Source: Ophelia neglecta (Eukaryota). From it: 64,000 bases of DNA. The position numbers and the translations under genes were made by a program. A model generated the notes under the pieces. That model saw only the letters and a list, made by a program, of their open reading frames with translations, was not told where the DNA came from and ran no database searches. The DNA is taken from NCBI GenBank assembly GCA_965285935.1, contig OZ260661.1:135222001-135286000 (forward strand). Reading direction: 5' to 3'. This document shows positions 5,773-43,100 of the stretch, piece after piece; position 1 is the first letter of the stretch; the number at the start of each line of letters is the position of its first letter.

Positions 5773-8646
5773 CATCAACATTGTGGTTATTAGCAAACCT
5801 GATGGTAAAATATTCATAGCTGATTTAAATTTAAACGCACATGATATAATGCATAGGTGAACATGGGCTAAAAACAAATCAGATTGAACTGTACATCTAC
5901 ATTATACAAGTAGGGGTTCAAAATTATTGCATGGGATTACACTTTGTATTTAACAGTTAAAGCAAAAAAATGAAATTTGAGGTTTGTTCAGTGATTTATT
6001 TAATCTGAGTTTGGGTTAAAGTTAAGTAACTATCAACGATTTAGTATTATTTAAAAGGTAGGCTCTTAGTGGCTCCCATTTCATGGGTAACATAGTTCAC
6101 GCTATGTTATTGATTGTCATGGCATTGACCTAGCATTTCAGTTGTACGGCTTTTCAAGGTGTCTACCGACCGTGTCGTCATCAACATTACCTTTGTACAT
6201 CACTAGACACAACAAATACATAGACTGGTAACCTACATGGCATTGCTGTCCCTCCGTTAAGGACACTAATCTAGAGAGACCAGCTGGCAAAATAAACACG
6301 CCTTCTGCGTCACTCTTATAAAAGGAAATCTTAATTATGTAAACAGTTTTGTGAGCCAGTGAATATTTAACGATAGTTTATTAATCTAGGTGTAATACCT
6401 ATTTTACAAACCCCTTTCCTTCATATAGTTTGAACGTTCACCCTGTTGTATTAAAAGACATTCAGACGGTAAATCACCCCATGCCTAATTCCAGAAAATA
6501 AACAGTTAACATCTTTGCTAGCACAGAAAGCAAAAAGTCTCAAAAACAAAACTGCTGTGAAAAGTACATTGAGTAAGTACCAACTCCTTTTTGGACGCTT
6601 CACAAAGCTGTGCACCTACAATCATTTAAACAATTTTACTGTATTGCATTCAACTCCAAAGGATACTGGGTTTTCTAAGTAAACATATTAAAATCGGAAA
6701 CTATTAGTTAATATCACGTCCTAAACTTAGGCAAATCTGTCAACAACGACAGCAATTTTTCATCCTGGTCCGTGATTCATTTTATCCTGGTCACGTGATA
6801 AATTACATCCCACTCAACCTTTGCCGAAATCGCCGTCGGTTTACCCCATACCATAGTGTCATGTGAATGTCTTGTTTGAACTATTTCGGAAAAAAACTCT
6901 GCGTTTAGCTTAGTTTTAAGATATGATCCTGATGGATTTCATCTGTATACACTTGTGAGTTATAGCAATGACGTATATTTTTTTATTACCTGTGTGCAGA
7001 ATCCACAACATCATGCGTTGGCTGCTCAGCTTATAGTTGAACATGTAAAAAGACAACGATAACAGGTAATTGTTGTCCTATTCCATTTTAAGATGCAATG
7101 ATGTTTTAAGTCCTTTGCTATTCTTGTGTTTATAAAGACAAATCCACAATCATTAGAGTCACGTTTTTGATAGAGCTTCATACATTGTATAATCTCAAAG
7201 GGCATTTGTTAATCGTTGACCTACATTGATCACTGACTTGTTTTGTGCCCTATGCACCATGGAAAACGACTGAGCTTATTTCTTTTCTTATTTTTGCTAT
7301 TTTCGAAAAAGCTTAATTACAAGTAAGGAACTAACGGTTCCTGTTCGAGCGCCTTCTCTTGACTATTCGTAAAAAAATTGATGGGTAATTCTTAATTGTT
7401 GATATTACACCGTCTGCAGGTTACCCCCCATGTTTCTCCTACGCTGGGTTTTAGACGGTAAGCGTCCCCGGGCACAGCTTATATTAACATTAACCCATGA
7501 TAGGTCCCATCAGCCTTAAGCCATCAATATCATAAACTGAAATTGCTAACCAGAGGCGTGATCTGTGGAACAAATAGATACAGATTTTTCTGAAATAAAG
7601 TTATATTTTAGTCGCCCTATTTTACCGTTTGGGGGAGATGGCTGCACATAGTTATTCTATGAATTTACTTTCAACCATGTGAATACTTAAACCTTTATAC
7701 AAACAGTCATAAGGTCATATACCAGGACACGTCAGTGGAAATAAATGCCGATGTGTGTCAACCATGTACAGTCTACCATGACGCAGTGCCGTCAACTGTC
7801 ATGATATGCATATATGGCTGGTGATTTATTCATAACTGAATACATCTTAACGCAGGGTAGATAGGGAATAAGGCATACTAGCCAGTTGGCATTGTTGTTG
7901 CTATCCCCAAAGTTCATATGAGGGGCAAACATAGATGTGTGCGTGTGTAAAATCGGACTGCAATTGTTCAGCGTGGATATGCTGGTCCCTATATCATAGA
8001 ACCATCATATTTAGCTTCACACACCACATTAACAGTCAAGATTGGACCATAGTTTTACATTGTCTCGAACTATTCAGTTCGCTCCCGGATCTTACGAAAA
8101 AGCAACCACAAACCGTAATTTCATAGTTATGAAACCCACAATTCTGTTCAATAAGAACATAAAGGACTATTTGAAAGGATTGAAGATAGGAAAAAAGAAA
8201 CACTCAAAGGCCTGGTGCAACCCATATCGGTTTTATATTGATTTACTTAATTGTGGCTCACAGTGGCTTGCGAAATCAGTCAACTGCACAGTGGTATGTT
8301 GCCGAATACAAAAAAAATAAGTAAACTAAAGGGTCTATATTCAAGATGAACAAGGTAACTATCATAGTACTATCACAGCTCCAAACAGATTCAAAACTTA
8401 ACTGCTATTACAAAGCATGGTTTGGGGTAACCTAATGTAATTCATATGCAATCGTTTATCACACAGTAACATGAAACGTTTAATAATAAGATTAAGAAAT
8501 GTATATACGTATATATGATTTCATGATTGTTTTAGAAGCTAGAATCATATGTATATATATATGTATGCACACTCGCCTCTCACTTAGTGATATTCAGGTT
8601 ATGTGAAATTTTAATCCACATACAAAGTATTAGTTTTAGAATTGTG

Positions 8647-16506: not shown

Positions 16507-19500
16507 TTAATTAGTCCGTGATACATTCAGTGGATTGTATGTGACATTCGGTGAGAGGGCCTCGTATTCTCTTTCAGTTACTTTTTCCACAGAAGCCCCA
16601 ACAGTCCGCCGCCCGCCTTCTCCTATGTCTTCATATGTACCATGAGTCGGCCGCCCAACTTCTTGTATGTCTTCATATGGACCATCAGTCTGCCGTCCGA
16701 TTTCTTGTATATCCTCGTATGGACCATCTACACATGGACTGTTTAAAGTATCGGCTCGTGGCTGAATGTAGCCTACTTCCTCATATTGAGAAGTAATATA
16801 TTGTCCCTGTCTTGAATTTGCTACGTTGTAATAATCATGGCCAGTGGGGGCGGGGGTGTTTGATCGTACGTCCTCGTGAGCTGCTGCTTCATTGTAATAT
16901 GTGTGTTCTGTGTAAGTCTTCTGTTGGTCTGCTGTGTGTTGCTTCCTGAAAATACATTTATTGATACTTATTATTATGAATATATACATTTGAAATCTCA
17001 TATGATACTTTGGTGTTCTGTTGAGTTTTCACAATTATCACAACTACACAAACAAAAAATCAATATAACCCCGATTGCTGATCCGATTAATAACTTTATA
17101 ATGGTATCACCGACATCACAAATAATATAAATATCAGCTTATTGTCAATTGCATTTTACATTTAGCCTTCAGGATTATCATAGCAGCACATCTTCCATTT
17201 TGTACATCTTCCTGCACGCAGTTTGTTTCCGGATCATTCCCTCCGCCCAACTTTCTCACCGCAACCTATCCGCTCCCAACCACTGTTTCTCACCCCGCCA
17301 CCTGTCTACTCGCTCTGGACGAGAAAGTTTGCAGCCCCTTCAGTCTCTTTCACCCTTTAAGTGTCAGTAATTGGTTCTTTCTTTATTCAGCCAGCCTGCT
17401 CGTCAAGCGCTTTGCCCATCCCTCATCTTCCTGCACAACACACCTACCCTCTCCCCCAAGCATACTGACTCGACCCCTTGGTTATCAGGTCGGGCATACT
17501 GTTGCCCCCTAAAATGTGATAAAAAACACTCTAGCCATGTTTTCCATTTTAATAAAAATATACTCAAAACGGTAAAGCATAAAATATATAACAAGAATAG
17601 ATACCCGGAAAGCTTAAGCAATGGTTTACCAACGATTTAACTATGAAAGGCCCATTTGACAGTCAACATATTTTGCATCTTACTAGCTAAGATTACTAAT
17701 CCGCTTCTCATAAGGACATATCTTACCTTCGTTTCTGGCAGACAACATACAGAACAACAGCAATAAAAGGGATTATCACACCACCCAGCACTGGTCCGAT
17801 ATATAAATAAATACTGGTACCTGGAAAAGTTATAAAATGATACTTTTAGACAAAGTATCTTTGTTCTAGTTTCCACGAAATATTATTGGTCTGGTCTAGG
17901 TGAAGACCAACTAACACTCGGGCCTCTTTGAAGGCTGCCGAAGTTGAACTTAACCTCTTCCATATGTGAAATGTATGTAGGGCATGCTTGTATAATTAAG
18001 GCTAAGCTTTCTCAGCTATACAAACAGCAGATGAACATTTGAGCCACATACCTACTCTGAGGAGTGTAATTTCTGACCTTAAAACATCTGCAATTCCTAA
18101 GTGAACATATGAAGAACATTTGACTGTCAATCAAAATATATCGGACAATGGTGGATTGAGGGATAAGCAAAGAAAGCAGGCTGATCAGATAAAGGAGTTG
18201 GAGGGTCTCTGTGGAAACTTGGAGTCAAAGGTTCTGGAGCAGGAACAATACTTTAGGATAAACAATTTTGAAATTCCGAATATCAAAGATGCGATGTTAA
18301 ACCAAACTACTCTAAAAGATCTCCTTCAATTTGCAGAGAATCATAAACCCAAAGAATAGAATTTTACTTTACATTAAAAAAATCTGTTTTCGATTCGTGT
18401 TTCCAAATTTACAACGACCTGTCTTCATATGCTGCAGTCACATTTAGGAAAATTTTCTGATATACATAGTTTTTACCTTGTTCACTGCTATCAGAGATTT
18501 TAGTGGTTGCCTTGATTGTTGGTTTAGTTTGAGATGTTGGAGTTGATGTATTATTGTATCCTGGTATATTTTTTGTAGAGCCATTCCTAGTAGTCATTGC
18601 TGCTGTCGTCGCCTTTTTAGAGCCATTGCCTTGTTGGGGTCTTATACTGGTTAATATCGCAGCTTCTGCATCTGAGTGAAATGATTTTGCATGAACACGG
18701 ATCGGATACATTAATTTGTGTTGTTCAAATTACCAACCGCCTAAAGTTGCTATTTAAATGAAGCAATGGGTGCACATCCTACAATTGAACCTCAATTTAC
18801 TACTGAAGATACAATGCCTGGAATCTTAATTTAAGTGTATCTACCTTTTCTTTCACATAAAAACCTATAATTATTTCCTAGATCATCTGTCCCAGCCCAT
18901 TTCCCGTCTATGAGCATCTTTGCATATCGCTCATTCACATTGGGTTCCCCGTCACACCAATTTTGCCATTCATACCACGCACCACCAAACCACTCCCATC
19001 TATCTCGCCTCATTGTTACGTTGTCGCTGTTCGCTGAGTTTGAAACGTCTTTTGTTAATCCAATCCAGAATTGGTTCGTTTCTTTCACGGGATCGCAATC
19101 CTGCCCCGACATGCACTTTATCCTGGTTAAAAGGTAACAATTAGTCATAATATTTAACTAATATAATACTTCAATAATAAAATAAGTCTCAAGTGTTCAA
19201 ACATTTGAAAAACACAACATCCACCACATGATAGGCATTATTGAGAAAATGTTTTATTAGGATGACAGTACTAGGTCACACATAGCATGCCATTCGTTTC
19301 ATTTCAATGCTGTAAGCATTAAAATACAAGAATCTTTCTTACAGCTTTTCGAAAACGAATTCGTTTTGTTCTTTGTTTTCTACTGATACTATAGAGGCAT
19401 GCAATCGTTCACATCTGCTAACTGCTTCTGTGTAATTTCGTAGAATGTTCTTTCCTGAGACATAATAACACCTCCCATCATAAGGATACCACGAGCCGTC

Positions 19501-19910
19501 AAATACACATTGATTTGCTACAACTGTAACAAAATAAACACAGCGAGTCATAATCGGGGAATAAACTGCCGGGAAAAATATATGAGAGCGCGGGCAACTT
19601 TAGCAATAAATGATTTACGACAAAGAGGAATCATAAACATACATAAACACAACCCACTTGACCGTATTTACTATTATCATTTTCACTTATATTTGTTCCC
19701 ACAAACCTAACTTTACCCGAATACGCACACGCCTTTAATTCCGCTCTAATTTCTTCGTTAATTGTAATAGTGAATAAACACGCTAGCTATGAGAATGGAA
19801 ATATTTGTATGTTCACATTGTATTAAGAGGTGCTTTAATATGTGTATACACATACCTGTACACAATGTAACTGCCACTAAGACATCAAGGAACAGGGCGG
19901 TAGGATACAT
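16507..19910 (-). CDS. G2: type I transmembrane C-type lectin-like receptor, tail type B (3x YEDI + terminal ITIM-consensus) (~413 aa)
   Basis: Exons 19856-19910, 19343-19523, 18845-19122, 18477-18671, 17727-17820 (TM IYLYIGPVLGGVIIPFIAVVLYVVC), 16507-16945. GT-AG, 1242 nt, open; AATAAA at 16485-16490. Confidence 0.9.
17890..18410 (+). mobile_element. Intronic LINE ORF1-like fragment (stalk-TM intron of G2; homologs in G3-G7)
   Basis: Coiled coil followed by LEQEQYFRINNFEIPNI, resembling the LEQYSRxNNxxIxGI motif of CR1/L2-group ORF1. Copies at ~24835-25350, 31780-32300, 41505-42020, 50330-50910, 60985-61500; absent from the 156-bp G1 intron. Confidence 0.6.
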
Positions 19911-21072
19911 ATTGGGCCGAGATTGGGATATCCTACACCACAGCGGCCATTTTAATACTGAAATGAACACGGAAGTGGTCTTCTGGCGCTCTTACACCTT
20001 TACACGACACGACCACCGCCTGTTTGAGGCCAACACATGTGTTATGGCTGGTAATGTATGTAGGTTGACAATGATGGCGACAGGGTCATTGATCACGGTT
20101 CGCTACGTATTCAGTTACCAATACCATGACTACTTAGTACACTGCAATAGCAATATAATGGCACAGCTCACGGGTATATATGCTTTTTAAACGTGGGAAG
20201 CGAATTAATATATTTATGAAATCACTAAATATCAAATCAAGTAAACTTAGCGTTGTACTCTATACCTATTATTGCAGTAGATCTTAACTTTTAATTTACG
20301 TAAATGCATTTCTTCACTACAACCTAATAAACCCTAGAGTGATGTACTCTTTCAATTATATATGACTAATTTCACCTCTTCACCTTGCAGTTGCGTCTTT
20401 AATTTCCGCTATACTAGAAATTGTCCCCCTAGACGTAATTCGTAGAACCTTGTTATGCTTATAAGAAAACCGTTATAACAAAACGAGGACTGATGAACTT
20501 GTTTGACAGCTACGGACTGACACCTAGCAATATCACAAGATCGGAAACGGTGTGCATGATGCCTTATGTAAAGCTATTGTTTATAATAAAGTGTATAACC
20601 ATAAAATCACAGATTGAAAACCAGAAAGTTCTAGTTACGCTACAATTAGACACAGTTACACAGGGAACTATACAACCCTCTTCAGTCTATTGTTCACTGA
20701 GACACTCTCTCTACATTTTACGAGGAGGTTATAATATCATAACCTCGTTTGGCACATATTTCATCTCTGTCCTACTATGACCACTGACTCGTTTGTTTTG
20801 TGAACTGACTCGCATCGTAGAAAAGTGTTTACTGCTTCTTATTGCGAGGGTTATCAATTCTATGTTTCCGGGTGTTTTAAAACTGCATAACATGGTGTGG
20901 TAATTGTGTAGTGAATTGGAGCAATAAATCGGAAACTATATATTTCATTTAGCAACACATAGTAATCACGAAAATGTACACAAGTATATCTTTCCATATT
21001 CTATGATAGTTGTGCTGAACGCGTATTATGACTTACGTGTAAATGTACGTAAACTCGTGTAGTGGCCGAAAT

Positions 21073-22400
21073 GGTGGTGGTATGTGTGCGCACGCACATT
21101 ATACCCTTGAGAGTTGAGATATATGTCTGTTTCAGGCAGGCCACGGAGGAAGTTCACCAACTCTCACATCCATTGAGTAGAGCAGCAAAGAGTGCACACT
21201 GCCAATGGCGCTCCTTGATGATACAAGGAGCGTCCCTGTTTGTGTCCAGAAAACACAGTAGTCGGCGCACATGTCCCTGTTTGGTTGCTATAAGATCCCG
21301 TACCTGTCGGGAGATCACGTGAAGAGAGATCAAGTTGCAAAGATAGCAGTACTGCTCTGTTCGTTGGATGGCCCTCCCAGAAACGACAAACGGACGGCAG
21401 TCATTTGCAACCATAAACAATGACATATATAGTTGATCCGTAATCCATCGCGTCCAACAAAGTCGCCACCAAAAATCCGCAGTTTACGCCTCATAGCAGC
21501 GCGTGGAGTAGCCAGTATGGACGTGTGCACCAGTAGGAGAGCGTGAAGCCAGGCTAGCCATCCATCATCTGGGAGAGAAGGTTGATGAAGAATACAAACA
21601 GGATGACAGACAGTGGATCCCCCTGACGAAGCGCGAGAGTCGCATGGATGGTGGTGTTCCCAATGAGACTAGCCGTGTTTGAAAGTAATGCACATAATGC
21701 CGCCAAAAAACGACCACCACAGCCTTTCACAGCCAGCTAATTTAATATAATTTGTCTTTTACGGGGGGTCATATGCCTTTTCGAAGTCAATAAATGTTAT
21801 GTACAATGTTTCCTTTGCTCTCCGAGCACGGTCGATAATGAGACGTAAAGTAGGCAGTTGTTTAAGACATCCTCGGCCAGGCTGGCCTCCATCCTGTGCC
21901 TGGCAAGGACCCCACCAGCGAGGAAATCGAGCTATTAAATAGAGGAGTACACCTCGGCAAGAGAGGGGATTACACTGATACCCCGATAGTTCCCAGGAAG
22001 AGATCGGTCCCCCTTTTTGAATAACATAGTCAACCTCGCCACTAACCATGCGTACATGGTTTTCCCCCACCAAATCAGATATCATGTTTTATAAGACACC
22101 GAATTTGTTGCCATCCGGTAATGTCAACTCCTCCCTCAATGCCAGAAAGGTACGAGTCTAGTATGTCTTGAATCACTGTGTTTAGGGCCCGCTTCAAGTC
22201 ATCGGCCCTGGGCTTAGTAATAGCTAAGTCCAAGTTGACACTTGGTCTGCCTGACCCAGACTGACTCATTATGAAATATACACAGGTGATCGAATGTACG
22301 GGGATAATAGACCATGGGCGCCAGTCAAGCGTAACATACAAGCAAACCCTTTCAAAATATGTCCAAAACTTATCTAGTCCCAGATTTTTACCGAGCTACA
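21073..22400 (-). mobile_element. Decayed LINE, copy b
   Basis: FIDFEKAYD and other RT fragments colinear with copy a; 3' end deleted. Confidence 0.85.
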
Positions 22401-23496
22401 GAAATGACTGTTCTTTGTCAAAGCCTCTATTGAACACAGTGCCCCAAATCCAAATTTAACGGCAAAGTGTCTCCACGGGAATCCTTGACAATCTGCCCTG
22501 GTATCCACACAAGCAACACTGTACTTATACACTATAAACATCATTTTGGGCCGAGGTCGAGATATTCTACCCCACTGCAGATATTTAAATGCTGAAATGA
22601 GGCTGGTAATATGAACTGTGTAATAAAACATGTCCTTTACATTACTTCGTCCAATATACATCCATGTTAACAGTCGAAAGAGATTTGCCGATGGGGCAGC
22701 ATTTCCCGGTGACTATGAGAGTATCTGCAGGAATGCAATACATGTATACATGTATACCACGTAGAAATTATTTTCAGAGTTGCATTAATGTCACAACTTA
22801 CGGCATTATTGTGGATCTTCGCTGAGCATAAAGCAACTAAGCCTTTGTACTGTACACAATTAAAATAATCTAAAAACAATACATTTACCGCTAATTATGA
22901 GACTAGAAGACATTATAACCTGCTTATTTTAGTATGTCTAGCTATTATTTACCGAGGACACAATCGATATATAGCTGAGCTATGAACATAGCTCCTAGCA
23001 CTGCCATGTTTTTTGTTAAAATGCCCTTAAAACTACATATCATGTGGTGACAAATATGTTGGAAAGTATATAGTAGATGTATATCTTTTCATCTTACCAC
23101 ACCTAGTCACGTTCCCCAGGCCCTGTTTTACACAAACACAGTTTTATCACTCGGCAGTTGTGTTGAACTTGTATTATGACTTGACCTGTAGCGTATGAAA
23201 ACTTGTATGGTGGTGGACACGGTCTGATGACGGCTGTCAATTAGATAGTGCAGTGGTTATATTTTGCTGCAGGAAAAAAAATTAATTGTTTAATACTTTT
23301 TCTCATTACCATCACTATATCACTTGGGCTGTCTTGTGCATTAATTAACTCTATGTTGGAGAACGACACTAACATAAAAAACAGCATTAAGATTGCTTAG
23401 AAAAGTATAGTAATTCCATAATAATTGAGTGCTTGTTATTTAAGCTGTCGTGGTTAAGGAAGGTTAAAGAAATACACTGTCTGTCCAAATCAAGTG

Positions 23497-26400
23497 TTAA
23501 TTAATCCGTGATATATTCAGTGGAGTGTATGTGACATTCGGTGAGAGGGCCTCGTATTCTCTTTCAGTGACTTTTTCCACAGAAGGCTCAACAGCCTGAC
23601 GCCCGACTTCTCCTATGTCTTCATATGGACCTTTAGTCGGCCTCCCCACTTCTTGTATGTCCTCATATGGACCATCAGTCTGCCGTCCGATTTCTTGTAT
23701 ATCCTCGTATGGACCATCTACACATGGACTGTTTAAAGTATCGGCTCGTGGATGAATGTAGCCTACTTCCTCATATTGAGAAGTAATATATTGTCCTGGT
23801 CTTGAATTTGCTACGTTGTAATAATCATGACCAGTGGGGGTGGGGGTGCTCGATCGTTCGACCCCGTGAGCTGCTGCTTCATTGTAATATGTGTGTTCTG
23901 TGTAGGTCTTCTGTTTGTCTGCTATCTGTTGCTTCCTAAAAATACATTTATTTGTACTTATTATTATGCATATACAAATTTGAAATCGCATATAATACTT
24001 TGGTGTTCAGTTCAGTTTTTCTCAATTATCACTACACAAACAAAAATCAATATAGCCCCGATGGCTAATCGGATGTATATGTATTTAATGGATTCACCGA
24101 CATCACAAATACTATTAATATCAGCTCATTGTCAATTTGCATTTTACATTTAGCCTTCAGGATTATCATAGCAGCTCATCTTCCATTTTGTACCAACTTT
24201 CTCACCGCGACCTATCCGCTCCCAACACCTGTTTCTCACCCCGCCACCTGTCTACTCGCCCTGGACGAGACAGTTTGCAGCACCGTCAGTCTCTTTCACC
24301 CTTTAAGTTTCAGTAATTGGTTCTTTCTTTATTCAGCCAGCCTGCTCGTCAAGCGCTTTGCCCATCCCTCATCTTCCCGCACAACACACCTACCCTCTCC
24401 CCACAACATTCTGACACGACCCCTTGGTTATCAGGCCGGGCATACTGTTGCCCCCTCAAATGTGATAAAAAGCACTCTGGCGATGTTTTCCATTTTAATT
24501 AAAATATACGCAAAACGGTAAAGCATAAAATATATAACAAGAATAGATACCCGGAAATCTTAAGCAATGGTTTACCAACGATTTAACGATGAAAGGCCCA
24601 TTTGACAGTCAACATATTTGGCATCTTACTAGCTAAGATTACTAATCCGCTTCTCAAAAGGACATATCTTACCTACGTTTCTGGCAGACAACATACAGAA
24701 CAACAGCAATAAAGAATATTATCACACCACCCAGCATAGGTCCGATATATAAATAAATACTGGTACCTGGAAAAGTTATAAAATGATACTATTAGACAAA
24801 GTATCTTTGTTCTACTTCCTACGAAATATTATTGGTCTGGTCAAGGTGAAGACCAACTAACACTCGGGCCTCTTTGAAGGCTGCCGAAGTTGAACTTAAT
24901 TTCTTCCATATGTGCAATGTATGTAAGGCATGCTTGTATAATTAAGGCTAAGCTTTCTCAGCTATACAAACAGCAGATGAGCATTTGAGCCACATACCTA
25001 CTCTGAGGAGTGTAGTTTCTGACCTTAAAACCTTTGCAATTCCTTAGCGAACATATGAAGAACATTTGACTGTCAATCAAAATATATCGGACAATGGTGG
25101 ATTGAGGGGTAAGCAAAGTAAACAGGCTGATCAGATAAAGGAGTTGAAGGGTCTCTGAGGAAACTAGCAGTCAAAGGTTCTGGAGCAGGAACAATTCTTT
25201 AGGATAAACAATTTTGAAATTCCGAATATCAAAGATGCGATGTCAAACGAAGCTACTCTAAAAGATCTCCTTCAATTTGCAGAGAATCATAAACCCAAAG
25301 AAAAGAATTTTACTTTACATTAAAAAAATCTGTTTTCGATTCGTGTTTCCAAATTTACAACGACCTGTCTTCATATGCTGCAGTCACATTTAGGTAAATT
25401 GTCTGATATACATAGTTTTTACCTTGTTCACTGCTATCAGAGATGTGTGTGGTTGCCTTCGTTGTTAGTTTAGTTTGAGATGTTGCTGCTGATGTGTTAT
25501 TGTCATCTGGTATACTTTTGGTAGAGGCATTCCTAGTAGTCGTCGCTGCTGTCGTCACCTTGTTAGAGCCATTACCTTGTTGGGGTCTTATACTGGGTGA
25601 TATCGAAGCTTCTGCATCTGAGTGAAATGATTTTGCATAAAATGGATCCGATGTACCAATTTGCGTTGTTTAAATTACCAACCGCCAGAATTTGTTATTT
25701 CAATGAAGCTCAGCAAAGGGGGAACGTCCTACAATTGAACCTCAATTTACCACTGAAGTTACATTGACTGGAATCTAATTCAGTCTATTTACCTTTTCTT
25801 TCACATAAAAATCTATAATTTCTTCCTGGATCATCTGTTCCATACCATTTCCCGTCGATGAGCATCCTTGCATATCCCTCATTGCCATTGGGTTCCCCGT
25901 CACCCCAATTTTTCCAATCATACCAAGCACCACCTAACCACTCCCATCCATCTCGCCTCATTGTTTCGTTGTTGCTGTTTGCTGAGCTTGAAACGTCCTT
26001 TGTTAATCCAATCCAGAATTGGTACATTCTATCCTCGGAATTGCAAACCTCCCCCGACATGCACTTTATCCTGGTTAAAATGGGAGAATAAGTCATATCA
26101 CATTGCTAATACAATAATACAATAATATAGTAAATCCGCTACAATTGAAAACCACAGCACCCACCACATTATAGGTATTATTGAGAAAATGTATTGGTAA
26201 GATAACAGTACTAGGGCACACATAGCATGACATTCGTTTCATTTGAATGCTATAAGCATTAAAATACAAGAATCTTTCTTACATGTTTTCGAAGACGAAT
26301 TTGTTTTGTTCCTCGTTTTCTAATGATACTAGAGAGGCATGCATTCCCTCACATATGCTAACCGCTTCTGTGAAATTTCGTAGAATGTTCTTTCCTGAGA

Positions 26401-26850
26401 CATAATAACACCTCCCATCATAAGGATACCACGAGCCGTCAAATACACATTGATTTGCTACAACTGTAACAAAATAAACACAGCGAGTCATAATCGGGGA
26501 ATAAACTGCCGGGAAAAATATATGAGAGCGCGGGCAACTTTAGCAATAAATGATTTACGACAAAGAGGAACCATAAACATACATAAACACAACCCACTTG
26601 ACCGTATTTACTATTATCATTTTCACTTATATTTGTTCCCACAAACCTAACTTTACCCGAATACGCACACGCCTTTAATTCCCCTCTAATTTCTTCGTTA
26701 ATTGTAATAGTGAACCAACACGCTAGCTATGAGAATGGAAATATTTGTATGTTCACATTGTATTAAGAGGTGCTTTAATATGTGTATACACATACCTGTA
26801 CACAATGTAACTGCCACTAAGACATCAAGGAACAGGGCGGTAGGATACAT
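23497..26850 (-). CDS. G3: type I transmembrane C-type lectin-like receptor, tail type B; G2/G4 chimera (~413 aa)
   Basis: Exons 26796-26850, 26283-26463, 25793-26070, 25423-25617, 24673-24766, 23497-23935; GT-AG, 1242 nt, open. Confidence 0.9.
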
Positions 26851-28012
26851 ATTGGGCCGAGATTGGGATATCCTACACCACAGCGGCCATTTTAATACTG
26901 AAATGAACACGGAAGTGGTCTTCTGGCGCTCTTACACCTTTACACGACACGACCACCGCCTGTTTGAGGCCAACACATGTGTTATGGCTGGTAATGTATG
27001 TAGGTTGACAATGATGGCGACAGGGTCATTGATCACGGTTCGCTACGTATTCAGTTACCAATACCATGACTACTTAGTACACTGCAATAGCAATATAATG
27101 GCACAGCTCACGGGTATATATGCTTTGTAAACGTGGGAAGCGAATTAATATATTTATGAAATCACTAAATATCAAATCAAGTAAACTTAGCGTTGTACTC
27201 TATACCTATTATTGCAGTAGATCTTAACTTTTAATTTACGTAAATGCATTTCTTCACTACAACCTAATAAACCCTAGAGTGATGTACTCTTTCAATTATA
27301 TATGACTAATTTCACCTCTTCACCTTGCAGTTGCGTCTTTAATTTCCGCTATACTAGAAATTGTCCCCCTAGACGTAATTCGTAGAACCTTGTTATGCTT
27401 ATAAGAAAACCGTTATAACAAAACGAGGACTGATGAACTTGTTTGACAGCTACGGACTGACACCTAGCAATATCACAAGATCGGAAACGGTGTGCATGAT
27501 GCCTTATGTCAAGCTATTGTTTATAATAAAGTGTATAACCATAAAATCACAGATTGAAAACCAGAAAGTTCTAGTTACGCTACAATTAGACACAGTTACA
27601 CAGGGAACTATACAACCCTCTTCAGTCTATTGTTCACTGAGACACTCTCTCTACATTTTACGAGGAGGTTGTAATATCATAACCTCGTTTGGCACATATT
27701 TCATCTCTGTCCTACTATGACCACTGACTCGTTTGTTTTGTGAACCGACTCGCATCGTAGAAAAGTGTTTACTGCTTCTTATTGCGAGGGTTATCAATTC
27801 TATGTTTCCGGGTGTTTTAAAACTGCATAACATGGTGTGGTAATTGTGTAGTGAATTGGAGCAATAAATCGGAAACTATATATTTCATTTAGCAACACAT
27901 AGTAATCACGAAAATGTACACAAGTATATCTTTCCATATTCTATGATAGTTGTGCTGAACGCGTATTATGACTTACGTGTAAATGTACGTAAACTCGTGT
28001 AGTGGCCGAAAT

Positions 28013-29345
28013 GGTGGTGGTATGTGTGCGCACGCACATTAAACCCTTGAGAGTTGAGATATATGTCTGTTTCAGGCAGGCCACGGAGGAAGTTCACCAA
28101 CTCTCACATCCATTGAGTAGAGCAGCAAAGAGTGCACACTGCCAATGGCGCTCCTTGATGATACAAGGAGCGTCCCTGTTTGTGTCCAGAAAACACAGTA
28201 GTCGGCGCACATGTCCCTGTTTGGTTGCTATAAGATCCCGTACCTGTCGGGAGATCACGTGAAGAGAGATCAAGTTGCAAAGATAGCAGTACTGCTCTGT
28301 TCGTTGGATGGCCCTCCCAGAAACGACAAACGGACGGCAGTCACGTGTATTTGCAACCATAAACAATGACATATATAGTTGATCCGTAATCCATCGCGTC
28401 CAACAAAGTCGCCACCAAAAATCCGCAGTTTACGCCTCATAGCAGCGCGTGGAGTAGCCAGTATGCACGTGTGCACCAGTAGGAGAGCGTGAAGCCAGGC
28501 TAGCCATCCATCATCTGGGAGAGAAGGGTGATGAAGAATACAAACAGGATGACAGACAGTGGATCCCCCTGACGAAGCGCGAGAGTCGCATGGATGGTGG
28601 TGTTCCCAATGAGACTAGCCGTGTTTGAAAGTAATGCACATAATGCCGCCAAAAAACGACCACCACAGCCTTTCACAGCCAGCTAATTTAGTATAATTTG
28701 TCTTTTACGGGGGGTCATATGCCTTTTCGAAGTCAATAAATGTTATTTACAATGTTTCCTTTGCTCTCCGAGCACGGTCGATAATGAGACGTAAAGTAGG
28801 CAGTTGTTTAAGACATCCTCGGCCAGGCTGGCCTCCATCCTGTGCCTGGCAAGGACCCCACCAGCGGGGAAATCGAGCTATTAAATAGAGGAGTACACCT
28901 CGGCAAAAGAGGGGATTACACTGATACCCCGATAGTTCCCAGGAAGAGATCGGTCCCCCTTTTTGAATAACATAGTCAACCTCGCCACTAACCATGCGTA
29001 CATGGTTTTCCCCCACCAAATCAGATATCATGTTTTATAAGACACCGAATTTGTTGCCATCCGGTAATGTCAACTCCTCCCTCAATGCCAGAAAGGTACG
29101 AGTCTAGTATGTCTTGAATCATTGTGTTTAGGGCCCGCTTCAAGTCATCGGCCCTGGGCTTAGTAATAGCTAAGTCCAAGTTGACACTTGGTCTGCCTGA
29201 CCCAGACTGACTCATTATGAAATATACACAGGTGATCGAATGTACGGGGATAATAGACCATGGGCGCCAGTCAAGCGTAACATACAAGCAAACCCTTTCA
29301 AAATATGTCCAAAACTTATCTAATCCCAGATTTTTACCGAGCTAC
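28013..29345 (-). mobile_element. Decayed LINE, copy c (duplicate of b)
   Basis: Near-identical to 21073-22400. Confidence 0.85.
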
Positions 29346-30442
29346 AGAAATGACTGTTCTTTGTCAACGCCTCTATTGAACACAGTGCCCTAAATCCAAA
29401 TTTAACGGCAAAGTGTCTCCACGGGAATCCTTGATAATCTGCCCTGGTATCCACACAAGCAACACTGTACTTATACACTATAAACATCATTTTGGGCCGA
29501 GGTCGAGATATTCTACCCCACTGCAGATATTTAAATGCTGAAATGAGGCTGGTAATATGAACTGTGTAATAAAACATGTCCTTTACATTACTTCGTCCAA
29601 TATACATCTATGTTAACAGTCGAAAGAGATTTGCCGATGGGGCAGCATTTCCCGGTGACTATGAGAGTATCTGCAGGAATGCGATACATGTATACATGTA
29701 TACCACGTAGAAATTATTTTCAGAGTTGCATTAATGTCACAACTTACGGCATTATTGTGGATCTTCGCTGAGCATAAAGCAACTAAGCCTTTGTACTGTA
29801 CACAATTAAAATAATCTAAAAACAATACATTTACCGCTAATTATGAGACTAGAAGACATTATAACCTGCTTATTTTAGTATGTCTAGCTATTATTTACCG
29901 AGGACACAATCGATATATAGCTGAGCTATGAACATAGCTCCTAGCACTGCCATGTTTTTTGTTAAAATGCCCTTAAAACTACATATCATGTGGTGACAAA
30001 TATGTTGGAAAGTATATAGTAGATGTATATCTTTTCATCTTACCACACCTAGTCACGTTCCCCAGGCCCTGTTTTACACAAACACAGTTTTATCACTCGG
30101 CAGTTGTGTTGAACTTGTATTATGACTTGACCTGTAGCGTATGAAAACTTGTATGGTGGTGGACACGGTCTGATGACGGCTGTCAATTAGATAGTGCAGT
30201 GGTTATATTTTGCTGCAGGAAAAAAAATTAATTGTTTAATACTTTTTCTCATTACCATCACTATATCACTTGGGCTGTCTTGTGCATTAATTAACTCTAT
30301 GTTGGAGAACGACACTAACATAAAAAACAGCATTAAGATTGCTTAGAAAAGTATAGTAATTCCATAATAATTGAGTGCTTGTTATTTAAGCTGTCGTGGT
30401 TAAGGAAGGTTAAAGAAATACACTGTCTGTCCAAATCAAGTG

Positions 30443-33400
30443 TTAATTAATCCGTGATATATTCAGTGGAGTGTATGTGACATTCGGTGAGAGGGCTTCG
30501 TATTCTCTTTCAGTGACTTTTTCCACAGAAGGCTCAACAGCCTGACGCCCGACTTCTCCTATGTCTTCATATGGACCTTTAGTCGGCCTCCCCACTTCTT
30601 GTATGTCCTCATATGGACCATCAGTCTGCCGTCCGATTTCTTGTATATCCTCGTATGGACCATCTACACATGGACTGTTTAAAGGATCGGCTCGTGGATG
30701 AATGTAGCCTACTTCCTCATATTGAGAAGTAATATATTGTCCTGGTCTTGAATTTGCTACGTTGTAATAATCATGACCAGTGGGGGTGGGGTTGCTCGAT
30801 CGTTCGACCCCGTGAGCTGCTGCTTCATTGTAATATGTGTGTTCTGTGTAGGTCTTCTGTTTGTCTGCTATCTGTTGCTTCCTAAAAATACATTTATTTG
30901 TACTTATTATTATGCATATACAAATTTGAAATCGCATATAATACTTTGGTGTTCAGTTCAGTTTTTCTCAATTATCACTACACAAACAAAAATCAATATA
31001 GCCCCGATGGCTAATCGGATGTATATGTATTTAATGGATTCACCGACATCACAAATACTATTAATATCAGCTCATTGTCAATTTGCATTTTACATTTAGC
31101 CTTCAGGATTATCATAGCAGCTCATCTTCCATTTTGTACCAACTTTCTCACCGCGACCTATCCGCTCCCAACCCCTGTTTCTCACCCCGCCACCTGTCTA
31201 CTCGCCCTGGACGAGACAGTTTGCAGCACCGTCAGTCTCTTTCACCCTTTAAGTTTCAGTAATTGGTTCTTTCTTTATTCAGCCAGCCTGCTCGTCAAGC
31301 GCTTTGCCCATCCCTCATCTTCCCGCACAACACACCTACCCTCTCCCCCCAACATTCTGACACGACCCCTTGGTTATCAGGCCGGGCATACTGTTGCCCC
31401 CTCAAATGTGATAAAAAGCACTCTGGCGATGTTTTCCATTTTAATTAAAATAAACGCAAAACGGTAAAGCATAAAATATATAACAAGAATAGATACCCGG
31501 AAATCTAAAGCAATGGTTTACCAACGATTTAACGATGAAAGGCCCATTTGACAGTCAACATATTTGGCATCTTACTAGCTAAGATTACTAATCCGCTTCT
31601 CAAAAGGACATATCTTACCTACGTTTCTGGCAGACAACATACAGAACAACAGCAATAACGAATATTATCACACCACCCAGCATAGGTCCGATATATAAAT
31701 AAATACTGGTACCTGGAAAAGTTATAAAATGATACTATTAGACAAAGTATCTTTGTTCTACTTCCTACGAAATATTATTGGTCTGGTCAAGGTGAAGACC
31801 AACTAACACTCGGGCCTCTTTGAAGGCTGCCGAAGTTGAACTTAATTTCTTCCATATGTGCAATGTATGTAAGGCATGCTTGTATAATTAAGGCTAAGCT
31901 TTCTCAGCTATACAAACAGCAGATGAGCATTTGAGCCACATACCTACTCTGAGGAGTGTAGTTTCTGACCTTAAAACCTTTGCAATTCCTTAGCGAACAT
32001 ATGAAGAACATTTGACTGTCAATCAAAATATATCGGACAATGGTGGATTGAGGGGTAAGCAAAGTAAACAGGCTGATCAGATAAAGGAGTTGAAGGGTCT
32101 CTGAGGAAACTAGCAGTCAAAGGTTCTGGAGCAGGAACAATTCTTTAGGATAAACAATTTTGAAATTCCGAATATCAAAGATGCGATGTCAAACGAAGCT
32201 ACTCTAAAAGATCTCCTTCAATTTGCAGAGAATCATAAACCCAAAGAAAAGAATTTTACTTTACATTAAAAAAATCTGTTTTCGATTCGTGTTTCCAAAT
32301 TTACAACGACCTGTCTTCATATGCTGCAGTCACATTTAGGTAAATTGTCTGATATACATAGTTTTTACCTTGTTCACTGCTATCAGAGATGTGTGTGGTT
32401 GCCTTCGTTGTTAGTTTAGTTTGAGATGTTGCTGCTGATGTGTTATTGTCATCTGGTATACTTTTGGTAGAGGCATTCCTAGTAGTCGTCGCTGCTGTCG
32501 TCACCTTGTTAGAGCCATTACCTTGTTGGGGTCTTATACTGGGTGATATCGAAGCTTCTGCATCTGAGTGAAATGATTTTGCATAAAATGGATCCGATGT
32601 ACCAATTTGCGTTGTTTAAATTACCAACCGCCAGAATTTGTTATTTCAATGAAGCTCAGCAAAGGGGGAACGTCCTACAATTGAACCTCAATTTACCACT
32701 GAAGTTACATTGACTGGAATCTAATTCAGTCTATTTACCTTTTCTTTCACATAAAAATCTATAATTTCTTCCTGGATCATCTGTTCCATACCATTTCCCG
32801 TCGATGGGCATCCTTGCATATCCCTCATTGCCATTGGGTTCCCCGTCACCCCAATTTTTCCAATCATACCAAGCACCACCTAACCACTCCCATCCATCTC
32901 GCCTCATTGTTTCGTTGTTGCTGTTTGCTGAGCTTGAAACGTCCTTTGTTAATCCAATCCAGAATTGGTACATTCTATCCTCGGAATTGCAAACCTCCCC
33001 CGACATGCACTTTATCCTGGTTAAAATGGAAGAATAAGTCATATCACATTGCTAATACAATAATACAATAATATAGTAAATCCGCTACAATTGAAAACCA
33101 CAGCACCCACCACATTATAGGTATTATTGAGAAAATGTATGTAAGATAACAGTACTAGGGCACACATAGCATGACATTCGTTTCATTTGAATGCTATAAG
33201 CATTAAAATACAAGAATCTTTCTTACATGTTTTCGAAGACGAATTTGTTTTGTTCCTCGTTTTCTAATGATACTAGAGAGGCATGCATTCCCTCACATAT
33301 GCTAACCGCTTCTGTGAAATTTCGTACAACCATCTTTCCTGAGACATAATAACACCTCCCATCATAAGGAAACCACTGGGCCTCAAATGCACATTGCTTT

Positions 33401-34257
33401 GCTACCGCTGAAATACATTAAACATAGCGGGTCATACGCGGGTAATAAACTACCGGGAAGAAATGTATGAGAGCGCGGGCATCTTAAAAAATAAATGCTT
33501 AGCATTGAGACAGACAAGAATCATTGATGACTAACATTATAAATAATGCAATGGAGCTATCACATTATTGTATCAGAATAAAAAATGGGGCCAACAAAAA
33601 TACCCTTCTTCCCTCTGCTACTTTCCCCGTTAGCTTACCACCGATCAAGTACAATTATGTTCGATGTGTAAACGTGCAGTGGCCGACTTAGGTACGATGC
33701 AATGTTTTCAATTAAGCCGCTTGGGGTGTCATCCTTAGGTTTTTTTATAAATTTGAAGCTGGCCTGTTTTGAGGGTCTTAGAAAATAGCATGGCCATTTC
33801 CGACAGCACCAATGACTTTCGGACTATAGGCGTTCTAAGCATCATCAAGTGCCATCTAAAAGGCCATTTAACCCGATAAAAACTATCCACGTTTGAGGAA
33901 GGAACACATTTGGATCACGAGCTCAAGAGTACTATTCGGACAATCAATGAATCCGTGAGCCTTGGCAGTATACATAAACACAACCCACTTCAACGTATTT
34001 ACTTACATTTTATTTACATTTTTACTTATATTCGTACACACACAACCTAACTTTAACCGAATACGCACACGCCTTCAACTCCCCTCTTATTTCTTCCTTA
34101 ATTGTATTAGTGAACCAACACGCTAGCTATGAGAATTGAAATATTAGTATGATCATATTGTATTAAGCGCACCTAGGTGTCTCAATATGTATATACACAT
34201 ACCTGTACACAACGTGACTGCCACTAAAACATCAAGGAACAGGTCGGTAAGATACAT
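30443..34257 (-). CDS. G4: type I transmembrane C-type lectin-like receptor, tail type B (~413 aa)
   Basis: Exons 34203-34257 (MYLTDLFLDVLVAVTLCT), 33227-33407 (AVAKQCAFEAQWFPYDGRCYYVSGKMVVRNF..), 32739-33016, 32369-32563, 31619-31712, 30443-30881; GT-AG, open. Confidence 0.9.
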
Positions 34258-40198: not shown

Positions 40199-43100
40199 TT
40201 AATTAGTCCGTGATACATTCAGTGGAGTGTATGTGACATTCGGTGAGAGGGCCTCGTATTCTCTTTCAGTTACTTTTTCCACAGAAGCCCCAACAGTCTG
40301 CCGCCCGACTTCTCCGATGTCTTCATATGTTACTTGAGTCGGCCGCCCAACTTCTTGTATGTCCTCATATGGACCATCGGTCTGCCGCCCGATTTCTTGT
40401 ATATCCTCGTATGGACCATCTTCACTTGGACTGTTTAAAGTATCGGCTCGTGGCTGAATGTAGCCTACTTCCTCATACTGAGAAGTAATATATTGCCCTG
40501 GCCTCGAATTTTCTACGTTGTAATAATCATGACCAGTGGGGGCGGGGGTGTTCGATCGTTCGTCCTCGTGAGCTGCTGCTTCATTATAATATGTGTGTTC
40601 CGTGTAGGTCTTCTGTTTGTCTGCTATCTGTTGCTTCCTAAAATTACATTTATTGGTACTTATTATTATGCATATATACATTTGAAATCTCATATAATAC
40701 TTTGATGTTCAGTTCAGTTTTTCACAATTATCACAACTACACAAACAAACAATCAATATAACCACGATGGCTAATCGGATGTTAATATATTTAATGGATT
40801 CACCGACATCACAAAAATCATTCCCTCTGCCCCACTTTCTCACCGCGACCTATCCGCTCCCAATCCATGTTTCTCACCCCGCCACCTGTCTATTCGCTCT
40901 GGACGAGAAAGTTTGCAGCACCGTCGGTCTCTTTCACCCTTTAAGTTTCAGTAATTTGCTCTTTCTTTATTCAGCCAGCCTGCTCGTCAAGCGCTTTGCC
41001 CATCCCTCATCTTCCCGCACAACACACCTACCCTCTCCCCCAGCATTCTGACTCGACCCCTTGGTTATCAGGCCGGGCATACTGACCACTCCCAGGCACC
41101 GGGATACTGTTGCCCCCCCCCCCCCCCAAATGTGATAAAAAACACTCTGGCCATGTTTTCCATTTTAATAAAAATATACTCAAAACGGTAAAGCATTAAA
41201 TATATAACAAGAATAGATACCCGGAAAGCTTAAGCAATGGTTTACCAACGATTAAACGGTGAAAACCCCATTTGAAAGTCAACATATTTGGCATCTTACT
41301 AGCTAAGATTACTAGTCCGCTTCTCAAAAGGACATATCTTACCTACGTTTCTTGCAGACAACATACAGAACAACAACAATAAAGAGGATTATCACACCAC
41401 CCAGCACTGGTCCGATATATAAATAAATACTGGTACCTGGGAAAGATATAAAATGATACTATTAGACAAAGTATTTTTGTTCTAGTTTCCACGAAATATT
41501 ATTGGTCTGGTCAAGGTGAAGACCAACTAACACTCGGGCCTCTTTGAAGGCTGCCGAAGTTGAACTTAACCTCTTCCATATGTGGAATGTATGTAGGGCA
41601 TGCTTGTACAATTAAGGCTAAGCTTTCTCAGCAATACAAACAGCAGATGAACATTTGAGCCACATACCTACTCTGAGGACTGTAGTTTCTGACCTTAAAA
41701 CCTCTGCAATTCCTAAGTGAACATATGAAGAACATTTGACTGTCAATCAAAATATATCGGACAATGGTGGATTGAGGGATAAGCAAAGAAAGCAGGCTGA
41801 TCAGATAAAGGAGTTGGAGGGTCTCTGTGGAAACTTGCAATCAAAGGTTCTGGAGCAGGAACAATACTTTAGGATAAACAATTTTGAAATTCCTAATATT
41901 AAAGATGCGAGGTTTAACGAAGCTACTCTAAAAGATCTCCTTCGATTTGTAGATAATCATAAACCCAAAGAATAGAATTTTACTTTACATTAAAAAAATC
42001 TGTTTTCGATTCGTATTTCCAAATTTACAACGACCTGTCTTCATATGCTGCACTCACATTTAGGTGAATTTTCTGATATACATAGTTTTTACCTTGATCA
42101 CTGTTGTCAGAGGTGTCAGTGGTTGCCTTGGTTGTTAGTTTAGTTTGAGATGTTGGAATTGATGTTTTGGTTGATCCATTTCTTTGTATTGTTGTCATCG
42201 CTGTTGTCGTCGCCTTGTTAGAGACATTACCTTGTTGGGGTCTTATACTGGATGATATCGAAGTTTCTGCATCTAAGCAAAGTGACTTTGCATGAACATG
42301 GATCGGTAATATTAATTTGCGTTGATCAAATAACCAACCGCCAATTTCTTTTAAATGAGTTTGTCTCAACAAAGGGGGCACGTCTTATAATAGAACATCA
42401 ACCAACTGCTGAAGATACATTGACTAGAATCAATTTCAGTCGATCTACCTTTTCTTTCGCATAAAAATCTATAAGTATTTCCTGGATAATGTGTCCCAGC
42501 CCATTTCCCGTCGATGATCATCCTTGCATATCCCTCATTGACATTGGGTTCCTCGTTTCCCCAATTTTGCCATACATACCAAGCACCACCGAACCACTCC
42601 CATCCATCTCGCCTCATTGTTACGTTCTCGCTGTTTGCTAAGTTTGAAACGTCCTTTGTTAATCCAATCCAGAATTGGTTCATTTCACTCCCGGGATCGC
42701 AACCCTGCCCCGACATGCACTTTGTCCTTGTTAAAAGGAAACAATAAGTCATACTACTAACTAATATAATACTACATAACAAAATAAGTCTCCACACATT
42801 TGAAAAGCCCAACGCCCACCACATGATAGGCATTATTGTGAAAATATATTGGTAGGATGACAGTACTAGGGAACACATAGCATGACATTAGTTTCATTTC
42901 AATGCTGTAAGCATTAAAATACAAGAATCTTTCTTACATGTTTTCGAAGACGAATTTGTTTTGTTCCTCGTTTTCTAATGATACTAGAGAGGCATGCATT
43001 CCTTCACATCTGCTAACCGCTTCTGTGAAAGTTCGTAGAACCATCTTTCCTGAGACATGATAACACCTCCCATCATAAGGATACCACTGGCCCTCAAAAT

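What the first reader, a model, noticed from the sequence alone, without database searches (positions are those of the whole stretch)
26283..26463. G3 is a newly born chimeric receptor: unequal crossover mapped to 9 bp inside CTLD exon 1
Seen: G3 upstream region, signal exon, 332-bp intron 1 and N-terminal CTLD (VVANQCVFDGSWYPYDGRCYYVSGKNILRN) match G2; from FTEAVSICEGMHASLVSLENEEQNKFVFENM to the stop it matches G4. The last G4-type base is 26373 and the first G2-type base is 26383, so the switch lies in AATTTCGTA (26374-26382), which is also the boundary of the 6.94-kb duplication. Inference: one non-allelic crossover added a gene, shuffled the lectin domain and put a G4-type binding region under a G2-type promoter.
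Basis: seen in the sequence. Interest (0 to 1): 0.75.

Follow-up and report, generated by a model that had tools for sequence, protein, structure and literature searches.

The report
Recent hybrid lectin-receptor gene duplicate
A 6.9-kb piece of a worm's lectin-receptor gene array was recently copied in tandem by a misaligned exchange inside an exon, leaving an intact hybrid gene between its two parents; this is a clean but textbook way for such families to grow.

Summary
A block at 19434-26382 recurs at 26374-33326 (32 substitutions and 2 indels in 6947 aligned columns, 99.5% identity). Its three edges fall on the same 9-bp tract (AATTTCGTA) of the first lectin-domain exon of three neighbouring minus-strand genes.

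G3 follows G4 at 306 of 313 informative sites left of the tract. It follows G2 at 145 of 149 sites to the right (Fisher p 2e-105). All six exons of G2, G3 and G4 are open and keep their splice sites.

One in-register unequal exchange between G2 and G4 is the simplest account. The product is an "anti-Lepore"-type duplication: a hybrid gene between two intact parents.

Caveats:
- I did not confirm the junction in reads. The only runs are short contigs of one sample, and none listed bridges the junction.
- "Newly born" is relative, given 0.46% divergence.
- Only the signal peptide and the first ~29 residues before helix 1 are G2-type. Every sugar-binding loop is G4-type.
- Promoter use and expression are untested, because no RNA run exists.

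The 12-gene array is mosaic throughout, so the mechanism is ordinary for this locus. This is a new member of a known kind, of modest interest.

The parts
19434..26382 (.). Copy 1 of the duplicated block: G2 5' part, the intergenic DNA and the G3 3' part
   Evidence: 6947 aligned columns against copy 2, with 32 substitutions and 2 indels
26374..33326 (.). Copy 2 of the duplicated block: G3 5' part, the intergenic DNA and the G4 3' part. It shares the 9-bp tract with copy 1.
26374..26382 (.). Switch tract AATTTCGTA, identical in G2, G3 and G4. It covers exon positions 82-90, from the last 2 bases of a Leu codon through Arg and Asn to the first base of the Phe codon.
   Evidence: The flanking informative sites are 26373 (G4-type) and 26383 (G2-type).
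19434..19442 (.). The same 9-bp tract in parent G2, at the left edge of the duplication
33318..33326 (.). The same 9-bp tract in parent G4, at the right edge of the duplication
26796..26850 (-). G3 exon 1 (signal peptide), 0 of 55 bases different from G2 and 5 of 55 from G4
26283..26463 (-). G3 exon 2 (first CTLD exon), the hybrid exon. Its 5' 81 nt are identical to G2 and its 3' 91 nt are identical to G4.
   Evidence: Pfam Lectin_C profile positions 3-31 match it.
25793..26070 (-). G3 exon 3 (second CTLD exon, with the EPN motif), 1 base and 1 residue different from G4 and 34 bases different from G2
   Evidence: Pfam Lectin_C profile positions 37-107 match it.
25423..25617 (-). G3 exon 4 (Thr/Ser-rich stalk), identical to G4
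24673..24766 (-). G3 exon 5 (membrane-spanning segment), 1 base different from G4
23497..23935 (-). G3 exon 6 (tyrosine-rich tail plus stop), 3 bases different from G4
19343..19523 (-). Parent G2 exon 2
33227..33407 (-). Parent G4 exon 2

Best explanation
G3 is a real, evolutionarily recent hybrid gene made by one unequal, homology-guided exchange between the neighbouring paralogs G2 and G4. The two genes paired out of register by one unit (about 6.94 kb), and the exchange resolved inside a 9-bp identical patch of the first CTLD exon. The product chromosome carries A-B-B-C. G2 (A|B) and G4 (B|C) stay intact, and the B|B joint is a new in-frame gene.

That gene has G2's upstream DNA, signal exon, short intron 1 and the beta0/beta1 N-terminal hairpin. 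It has G4's helix alpha-1 onward: the rest of the CTLD with its EPN loop, the stalk, the membrane span and the tyrosine-rich tail. This corresponds to the 'anti-Lepore' (duplication) product of unequal crossing-over.

What is shown: the anatomy, the single switch point and the open frames. What is inferred: that the exchange was a meiotic or mitotic crossover, that G3 is expressed from G2-like control DNA, and that it works as a membrane lectin receptor with G4-like sugar binding.
For: - Period and edges: copy 1 (19434-26382) and copy 2 (26374-33326) are 99.5% identical over 6947 columns. The three edges sit at the same homologous 9-mer in G2, G3 and G4.
- Single switch: G3 is G4-type at 306 of 313 informative sites on the left and G2-type at 145 of 149 on the right, p = 2e-105.
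- Rare shared character: intron 1 is 332 bp in G2 and G3 only. It is about 730-795 bp in the other ten genes, by BLAST placement.
- Intact genes: all six exons of G2, G3 and G4 are open with AG/GT kept.
- Assembly context: there is no N in the window or in the 60 kb of flanks fetched. All 13 genome matches of the exon lie in this one array on contig C1, so no stray haplotig exists.
- Both block versions exist in the sequenced individual. All 6 of 6 'other letters' listed by read laying are the other copy's letter, at 6 of the 26 substitution sites inside the laid stretch.
- The rest of the array is mosaic, so exchange is habitual here.
Against: - No read-level proof of the joint. In one search the runs are short Logan contigs of one sample (longest laid pieces 125-560 nt), and none of the 24 listed pieces bridges 26373/26383 (352 pieces were not shown).
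- My laid stretch lay wholly inside the duplicated block, so depth could not separate 'two copies' from 'two alleles'.
- No variant beyond the two block versions was listed in 5.9 kb. That is also what a falsely duplicated heterozygous single copy would give.
- The exchange lies in a patch of only 9 identical bases, in a region where G2 and G4 are 88% alike. Tracts of up to 91 bp exist elsewhere, so this is atypical for classical homologous crossover.
- No RNA run exists, so expression is unknown.
Confidence: 0.78

Rival explanations
1. Same product, different mechanism. A replication-based template switch or microhomology-mediated repair (unequal sister-chromatid exchange on a short repeat, or MMBIR-like) used the 9-bp patch, rather than a classical homologous crossover.
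For: The switch tract is only 9 bp, inside 88%-identical sequence. G2 and G4 share 31 identity tracts of 30 bp or more, up to 91 bp, and none of them was used. A model of tandem amplification by short repeated sequences is in print (PMC8831618; I saw only the search listing and the start of the abstract).
Against: The joint is exactly in register between paralogs, and the reading frame is kept. That is expected from homology-guided pairing and would be a rare coincidence for a pure microhomology event. Also, 25% of all identical G2/G4 bases lie in tracts of 9 bp or less, so a crossover landing in one is not improbable. The sequence alone cannot separate the two mechanisms.
Confidence: 0.1
2. 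Assembly artefact. The locus has one copy of the block, and two alleles differing by about 0.5% were laid in tandem, so G3 does not exist.
For: Only two versions of the block were seen in the one sample, and the contig depths have the 1:2 pattern expected under either model. No listed contig bridges the joint. The 0.46% divergence is in the range of allelic differences in many marine invertebrates (own knowledge).
Against: A false tandem copy would need a joint that no read supports. Here the joint is a seamless, in-frame, in-register hybrid of two paralogous exons with only 9 bp of overlap, which overlap-based assemblers do not invent (inference). No N or scaffold gap lies within the window or its fetched flanks, 124 kb in all. 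No leftover haplotig of the locus exists in the 223 contigs.
Confidence: 0.07
3. G3 is an old gene whose 5' half was converted by G2 and whose 3' half was converted by G4, in two separate gene conversions.
For: Short conversion-like patches do occur in this array. The 3' half of G5 exon 2 is 97.8% identical to G4, while its 5' half is 86%.
Against: The near-identity runs unbroken through 3.6 kb of intergenic DNA on both sides, for a full 6.94-kb period. Two tracts of about 3.5 kb would have to meet at one 9-bp patch that is also the outer edge of both tracts in G2 and G4.
Confidence: 0.03

Closest known systems
Haemoglobin 'anti-Lepore' duplications and HBB/HBD chimeric fusion genes of laurasiatherian mammals (Gaudry et al. 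2014, PMC4041002; abstract read)
   Same: Unequal crossing-over between tandem paralogs yields a duplication chromosome with a hybrid gene between the parental genes. The coding sequence of one paralog acquires the 5' and promoter sequence of the other.
   Different: Here the parents are membrane C-type-lectin receptors of an invertebrate. Both parents are still intact, whereas in the globin cases the parental genes were typically inactivated or deleted after fixation (abstract). Expression and fixation are unknown here.
Hybrid genes of vertebrate immune-receptor clusters, e.g. KIR fusion genes from unequal crossing-over (PMC11444179 and PMC3489906; only the search listing and abstract starts seen)
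   Same: A tandem array of immune-type receptors varies in gene number and makes fusion genes by misaligned exchange.
   Different: The domain family differs (immunoglobulin versus CTLD). KIR hybrids are documented across many haplotypes, while only one assembly is available here.
Other tandem families that grow by unequal exchange with chimeric genes: stickleback spiggin (PMC4989455) and sea-urchin Sp185/333 (PMC5103432); search listing and abstract starts only
   Same: These are tandem arrays of recently duplicated, fast-diverging genes, with segmental duplications and chimeras.
   Different: The proteins are unrelated. I did not read these papers beyond the listing.
Long-form C-type lectin-like domains such as those of DEC-205/Ly75, PLA2R, DC-SIGN and NKG2A (PDB hits)
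   Same: The exon 2 peptide matches the 'W..Y.G.CY ... (W/F).EA...C' start of these domains (best E 1.4e-11, 7jpt_A). Exon 3 matches the C-terminal half (best E 0.0036, 2kv3_A).
   Different: In exon 3, EPN is kept but the usual WND is replaced ('WYGTDD'). Sugar binding is untested.

Membership tests
Hybrid gene from unequal crossing-over, duplication ('anti-Lepore') product | Tandem A-B-B-C structure whose period equals the distance between the two parental homologous points | tested here: met
   19434-26382 against 26374-33326; period 6940-6946; 99.5% identity
Hybrid gene from unequal crossing-over, duplication ('anti-Lepore') product | A single switch of parentage inside the hybrid gene, in register with both parents | tested here: met
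   306 of 313 sites G4-type on the left and 145 of 149 G2-type on the right; switch in a 9-bp tract shared by all three genes
Hybrid gene from unequal crossing-over, duplication ('anti-Lepore') product | Both parental genes retained, flanking the hybrid; reading frame of the hybrid kept | tested here: met
   Exon-by-exon translation of G2, G3 and G4: all open, with splice dinucleotides kept
Hybrid gene from unequal crossing-over, duplication ('anti-Lepore') product | Joint present in raw reads or in independent individuals | tested here: inconclusive
Hybrid gene from unequal crossing-over, duplication ('anti-Lepore') product | Reciprocal deletion product exists in the population | not testable with these tools
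   Only one sample and one assembly are available
C-type lectin-like domain (Pfam PF00059) | Match to the family profile above the curated cut-off | tested here: inconclusive
Searched exon by exon. Exon 2 scores 19.3 bits on profile positions 3-31 and exon 3 scores 17.4 bits on 37-107, each below the 22.6 cut-off, though the two halves are complementary.
C-type lectin-like domain (Pfam PF00059) | Sequence similarity to solved CTLDs | tested here: met
   Exon 2: 97 PDB sequences at E<=1, best 1.4e-11 (DEC-205), and nearly all of the 60 shown are C-type lectin-like domains (two are Mucin-2). Exon 3: 22 at E<=1, best 0.0036, 21 of them CTLDs.
C-type lectin-like domain (Pfam PF00059) | Ca2+/sugar-site motifs (EPN or QPD, and WND; motif names recalled) | tested here: inconclusive
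   EPN is present in exon 3 of G2, G3 and G4. The WND position reads W-Y/A-G-T-D-D. Binding was not tested.

The most novel reading that the evidence does not exclude
The conserved middle of the first CTLD exon may act as a recurrent exchange hinge. It would let this 12-gene array recombine two fast-evolving modules in the germ line: the N-terminal hairpin, with its hypervariable codons 3-10 and 25-27, and the loop-bearing rest of the domain. G3 would then be only the youngest of a series of such module swaps, and the hybrid would carry a genuinely new combination of selected surfaces.

Hints:
- G5 changes its nearest paralog near the same point of the exon (86% to G4 in the 5' half, 97.8% in the 3' half).
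- The nearest paralog changes from exon to exon in most genes.
- G2 and G4 differ by 11 nonsynonymous and 0 synonymous changes in the first 29 codons.
Probability: 0.2. Interest if true: 0.5.

Novelty: new member of a known kind. Interest (0 to 1): 0.3.

Why it matters
This is an unusually clean, base-resolved snapshot of how an invertebrate immune-type receptor array gains a gene. Both parents and the hybrid are intact, the exchange is bounded to 9 bp, and few later changes have accumulated. That makes it a convenient natural experiment for three questions:
- Does a G4-type ectodomain behind G2-type upstream DNA change its expression?
- Is the locus a copy-number polymorphism?
- Which copy decays first? 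All 5 coding changes since the event lie on G4, and 4 of them change the protein.

It does not reveal a new mechanism.

Tried and rejected
- Reads. The look-up of sequencing runs found 3 runs of one sample and one study, with no RNA run. Read laying on 23400-29300 at 99% likeness returned only short contigs. It shows that both block versions exist in the sample, but it shows neither the joint nor a usable depth ratio. I chose a stretch wholly inside the duplicated block, which in hindsight excluded a single-copy reference. I tried to read copy number from contig depths and rejected the result: pieces shared by both copies gave both about 54 and about 24-37 in run X1.
- Two-sided gene conversion: rejected on the unbroken 6.94-kb identity.
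- The idea that the G8/G11 pair marks an older hybrid with its edge at exon 3 (from the BLAST hit): rejected. G8 and G11 are not each other's nearest paralogs in exon 3. The stringent comparison places the young block at G7/G10, ending in intergenic DNA.
- Intergenic content. No ORF of 100 aa or more lies between G3 and G4 apart from one 133-aa plus-strand ORF (26729-27130) that overlaps the G3 signal exon and was not examined, and the only tandem repeat is the 42-bp one in the tail exons.
- Literature. Three searches found comparators but nothing on this locus.
- Earlier notes. A words search returned nothing.
- Not done. The big protein searches were not used, since the claim does not rest on them. 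Supplementary files were not needed.
Full report
**What is there**

The window is G000:C1:135222001-135286000, part of a 762-Mb assembly in 223 contigs. It holds seven minus-strand repeat units with start-to-start spacings of 8989, 6948, 6946, 9710, 10157 and 9320 bp. With 50 kb fetched to the right and 10 kb to the left, the array has 12 genes plus one exon fragment.

Each gene has six coding exons. For G3 these are:
- signal exon 26850-26796
- intron 1 of 332 bp
- first CTLD exon 26463-26283
- second CTLD exon 26070-25793
- Thr/Ser-rich stalk 25617-25423
- membrane span 24766-24673
- tyrosine-rich tail 23935-23497

Searched exon by exon, the two CTLD exons hit Pfam Lectin_C on complementary profile positions. 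Exon 2 scores 19.3 bits on positions 3-31 and exon 3 scores 17.4 bits on positions 37-107. Each is below the 22.6-bit cut-off on its own. Both exons also hit solved CTLDs, with best E-values of 1.4e-11 (DEC-205) and 0.0036.

**Check of the observation**

An alignment of the window against itself at an offset of about 6.94 kb shows 0-6 differences per 250 bp from 19500 to 26250. Outside that range it shows 8-68 per 250 bp. The list of differences gives the edges:
- G2 and G3 differ at 16 places from 26245 to 26373, and then not again until 26571.
- G3 and G4 differ twice between 25861 and 26196, counting a 2-bp indel, and then densely from 26383.

The switch is therefore bounded by 26373 and 26383. 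The 9 bases between them are AATTTCGTA, identical in all three genes.

In a three-way alignment, I took the sites where G2 and G4 differ. On the left, G3 has the G4 base at 306 sites and the G2 base at 7. On the right, it has the G2 base at 145 and the G4 base at 4. Fisher's exact test gives p = 2e-105.

**Anatomy of the event**

The duplicated block is 19434-26382 and again 26374-33326. Over 6947 aligned columns it has 32 substitutions (16 transitions, 16 transversions) and two indels of 6 and 2 bp, so p = 0.46%. Spread along the block is not significantly uneven (chi-square p = 0.11).

The structure is A-B-B-C:
- A|B is the native G2.
- B|C is the native G4.
- B|B is G3.

A rare character agrees with this. 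The 332-bp intron 1 is shared by G2 and G3 only. The other ten genes have about 730-795 bp by BLAST placement, though I did not check their donor sites.

All exons of the three genes are open, with AG/GT kept. One in-register unequal exchange explains every feature. Two independent conversion tracts would have to be about 3.5 kb each, run through the intergenic DNA, and meet at the very patch that is also their outer edge in G2 and G4.

**What the hybrid protein is**

The G2-derived part is the signal peptide (0 of 55 bases differ from G2; 5 bases and 2 residues differ from G4) and the first ~29 residues of the CTLD exon. In that stretch G3 differs from G4 at 9 residues.

In alignments to solved CTLDs, the residue just after the junction (F in RNFTEA) sits where these domains have the W/F that begins helix alpha-1 (the secondary-structure names are recalled). 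So the junction lies between strand beta-1 and helix alpha-1. That is the very start of the Pfam profile.

Everything from alpha-1 onward is G4-type: the EPN-bearing exon, the stalk, the membrane span and the tail. 'Shuffled the lectin domain' is thus literally true but small. The predicted sugar site is purely G4-type.

The N-terminal piece is not inert in evolution, however. G2 and G4 differ there by 11 nonsynonymous and 0 synonymous changes. Across the family, pN/pS is 0.96 there and 0.64 in the second half of the exon. The numbers are too small for a test.

**Age**

The copies differ by 0.46%, so 'newly born' holds only relative to the 8-24% differences between G2 and G4 across most of the gene body. 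If the exchange was between two homologous chromosomes, some or all of the 32 differences could be allelic differences already present at the time. The event could then be younger than the divergence suggests (inference).

Using the third gene as an outgroup, changes since the event in the gene region fall as follows:
- 7 on G4 and 3 on G3 in the left part
- 4 sites on G2 and 4 on G3 in the right part

All 5 coding differences between G3 and G4 are G4-derived, and 4 change the protein. One is a Leu-to-Pro change after the EPN motif. A 5:0 split is not significant.

**Mechanism**

The exchange used a 9-bp identical patch in a stretch where G2 and G4 are 88% alike. Yet the two genes share 31 tracts of 30 bp or more, the longest being 91 bp. 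That is atypical for classical homologous crossover and leaves room for a microhomology or template-switch route.

Two points argue the other way. First, 25% of identical bases lie in tracts of 9 bp or less. Second, the exact register argues for homology-guided pairing. I keep 'unequal homologous exchange' as the best reading and the replicative route as a rival. The product is the same either way.

**Is it real DNA?**

This is the weak point. Only three runs hold the stretch. All come from one sample and one study, all are kept as Logan contigs, and none is RNA.

Laid at 99% likeness on 23400-29300, they gave 135, 105 and 132 contigs. The 24 listed pieces are 125-560 nt long, none bridges 26373/26383, and 352 further pieces were not shown. 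All six 'other letters' listed (24227, 26571, 26683, 27127, 27746, 28042) are the other copy's base, at 6 of the 26 substitution sites inside the stretch. So both versions exist in the animal. No third version was listed.

That result fits two paralogous copies. It fits equally well two alleles of one copy.

Against an artefact:
- There is no N in the window or in the fetched flanks, 124 kb in all.
- There is no extra haplotig of the locus in the assembly.
- The joint is a seamless in-frame hybrid of two paralogous exons with 9 bp of overlap, and every contig base must come from some read (inference).

I put the artefact at about 7%.

**Context**

The array is mosaic. The nearest paralog of a given gene changes from exon to exon. 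For G2 it is G3/G1 in the first half of exon 2, then G12, then G9 for exons 3 and 5, and G8 for the tail. The 3' half of G5 exon 2 is 97.8% identical to G4, while its 5' half is 86%.

A second young block joins G7 and G10:
- 57858-61580 matches 80417-84138 at 99.25%.
- 62440-67837 matches 88071-93479 at 99.3-99.8%.

That block contains a whole gene and ends in intergenic DNA, so it is not a hybrid. Exchange and duplication are therefore routine at this locus, and G3 is the cleanest case.

**Comparison with what is known**

The anatomy is that of the duplication ('anti-Lepore') product of unequal crossing-over. In the beta-globin family, chimeric HBB/HBD genes arose repeatedly in this way and gave one paralog's coding sequence the other's promoter (PMC4041002, abstract read).

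Other comparators, seen only as search listings and abstract starts, are:
- KIR fusion genes (PMC11444179, PMC3489906)
- spiggin (PMC4989455)
- Sp185/333 (PMC5103432)

The kind is well known, and this is a new instance in an invertebrate CTLD receptor array. Earlier notes of this scan call the animal probably an annelid, which I did not test. No RNA data exist, so 'G2-type promoter' is a statement about position, not function.

**Verdict**

The junction remains unconfirmed in reads. Interest is modest.

Noticed in passing
window 57858-61580 and 62440-64000, continuing in L001; partner block in L002:6417 to L003:9479 (extended coordinates 80417-93479): A second young duplication joins G7 and G10. 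About 9 kb is 99.25-99.8% identical, with a ~3-kb gain in the G10 copy between its membrane-span exon and its stalk exon. The block holds a whole gene and is not a hybrid. It is as young as the G3 event.
   Followed up: partly
window 42938-43118 (G5 exon 2): The 3' 91 nt of the exon are 97.8% identical to G4/G3, but the 5' 81 nt are only 86% identical and resemble G6/G8. Exon 3 of G5 is not G4-like. This looks like a short conversion patch starting near the same point of the exon as the G3 switch.
   Followed up: partly
window 25861, 24713, 23846, 23739, 23551 (G3) = 32807, 31659, 30792, 30685, 30497 (G4): All five coding differences between G3 and G4 have G3 equal to G2, so they arose on G4. 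Four change the protein, including Leu to Pro shortly after the EPN motif. The parent, not the hybrid, has been changing.
   Followed up: partly
window 26464-26795 and 19524-19855: Intron 1 is 332 bp in G2 and G3. It is about 730-795 bp in the other ten genes of the array (BLAST placement only), so a deletion of roughly 450 bp marks the G2 lineage.
   Followed up: partly
window 26377-26461 vs 33321-33405: In the first 29 codons of the CTLD exon, G2 and G4 differ by 11 nonsynonymous and 0 synonymous changes. These cluster at codons 3-10 and 25-27, which also vary across the 12 genes.
   Followed up: partly
window 27165-27273: In 2 of 3 runs, one contig skips these 109 bases, with a short side of only 27 letters. 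G2, G3 and G4 all carry the 109 bases in the assembly. The skip is unexplained; it may be a contig of another unit or an allele.
   Followed up: partly
window 24193: Contigs in runs X1 and X3 leave the stretch here (loose ends). This is also the point where homology with the G2 unit (17247) begins. I did not look up the loose letters.
   Followed up: no
window 62435-62439 (G7 exon 2, exon positions 45-49) vs G10: G7 and G10 are identical through the rest of exon 2 and through exons 3 and 5, but differ at 3 bases within 5 nt here.
   Followed up: no
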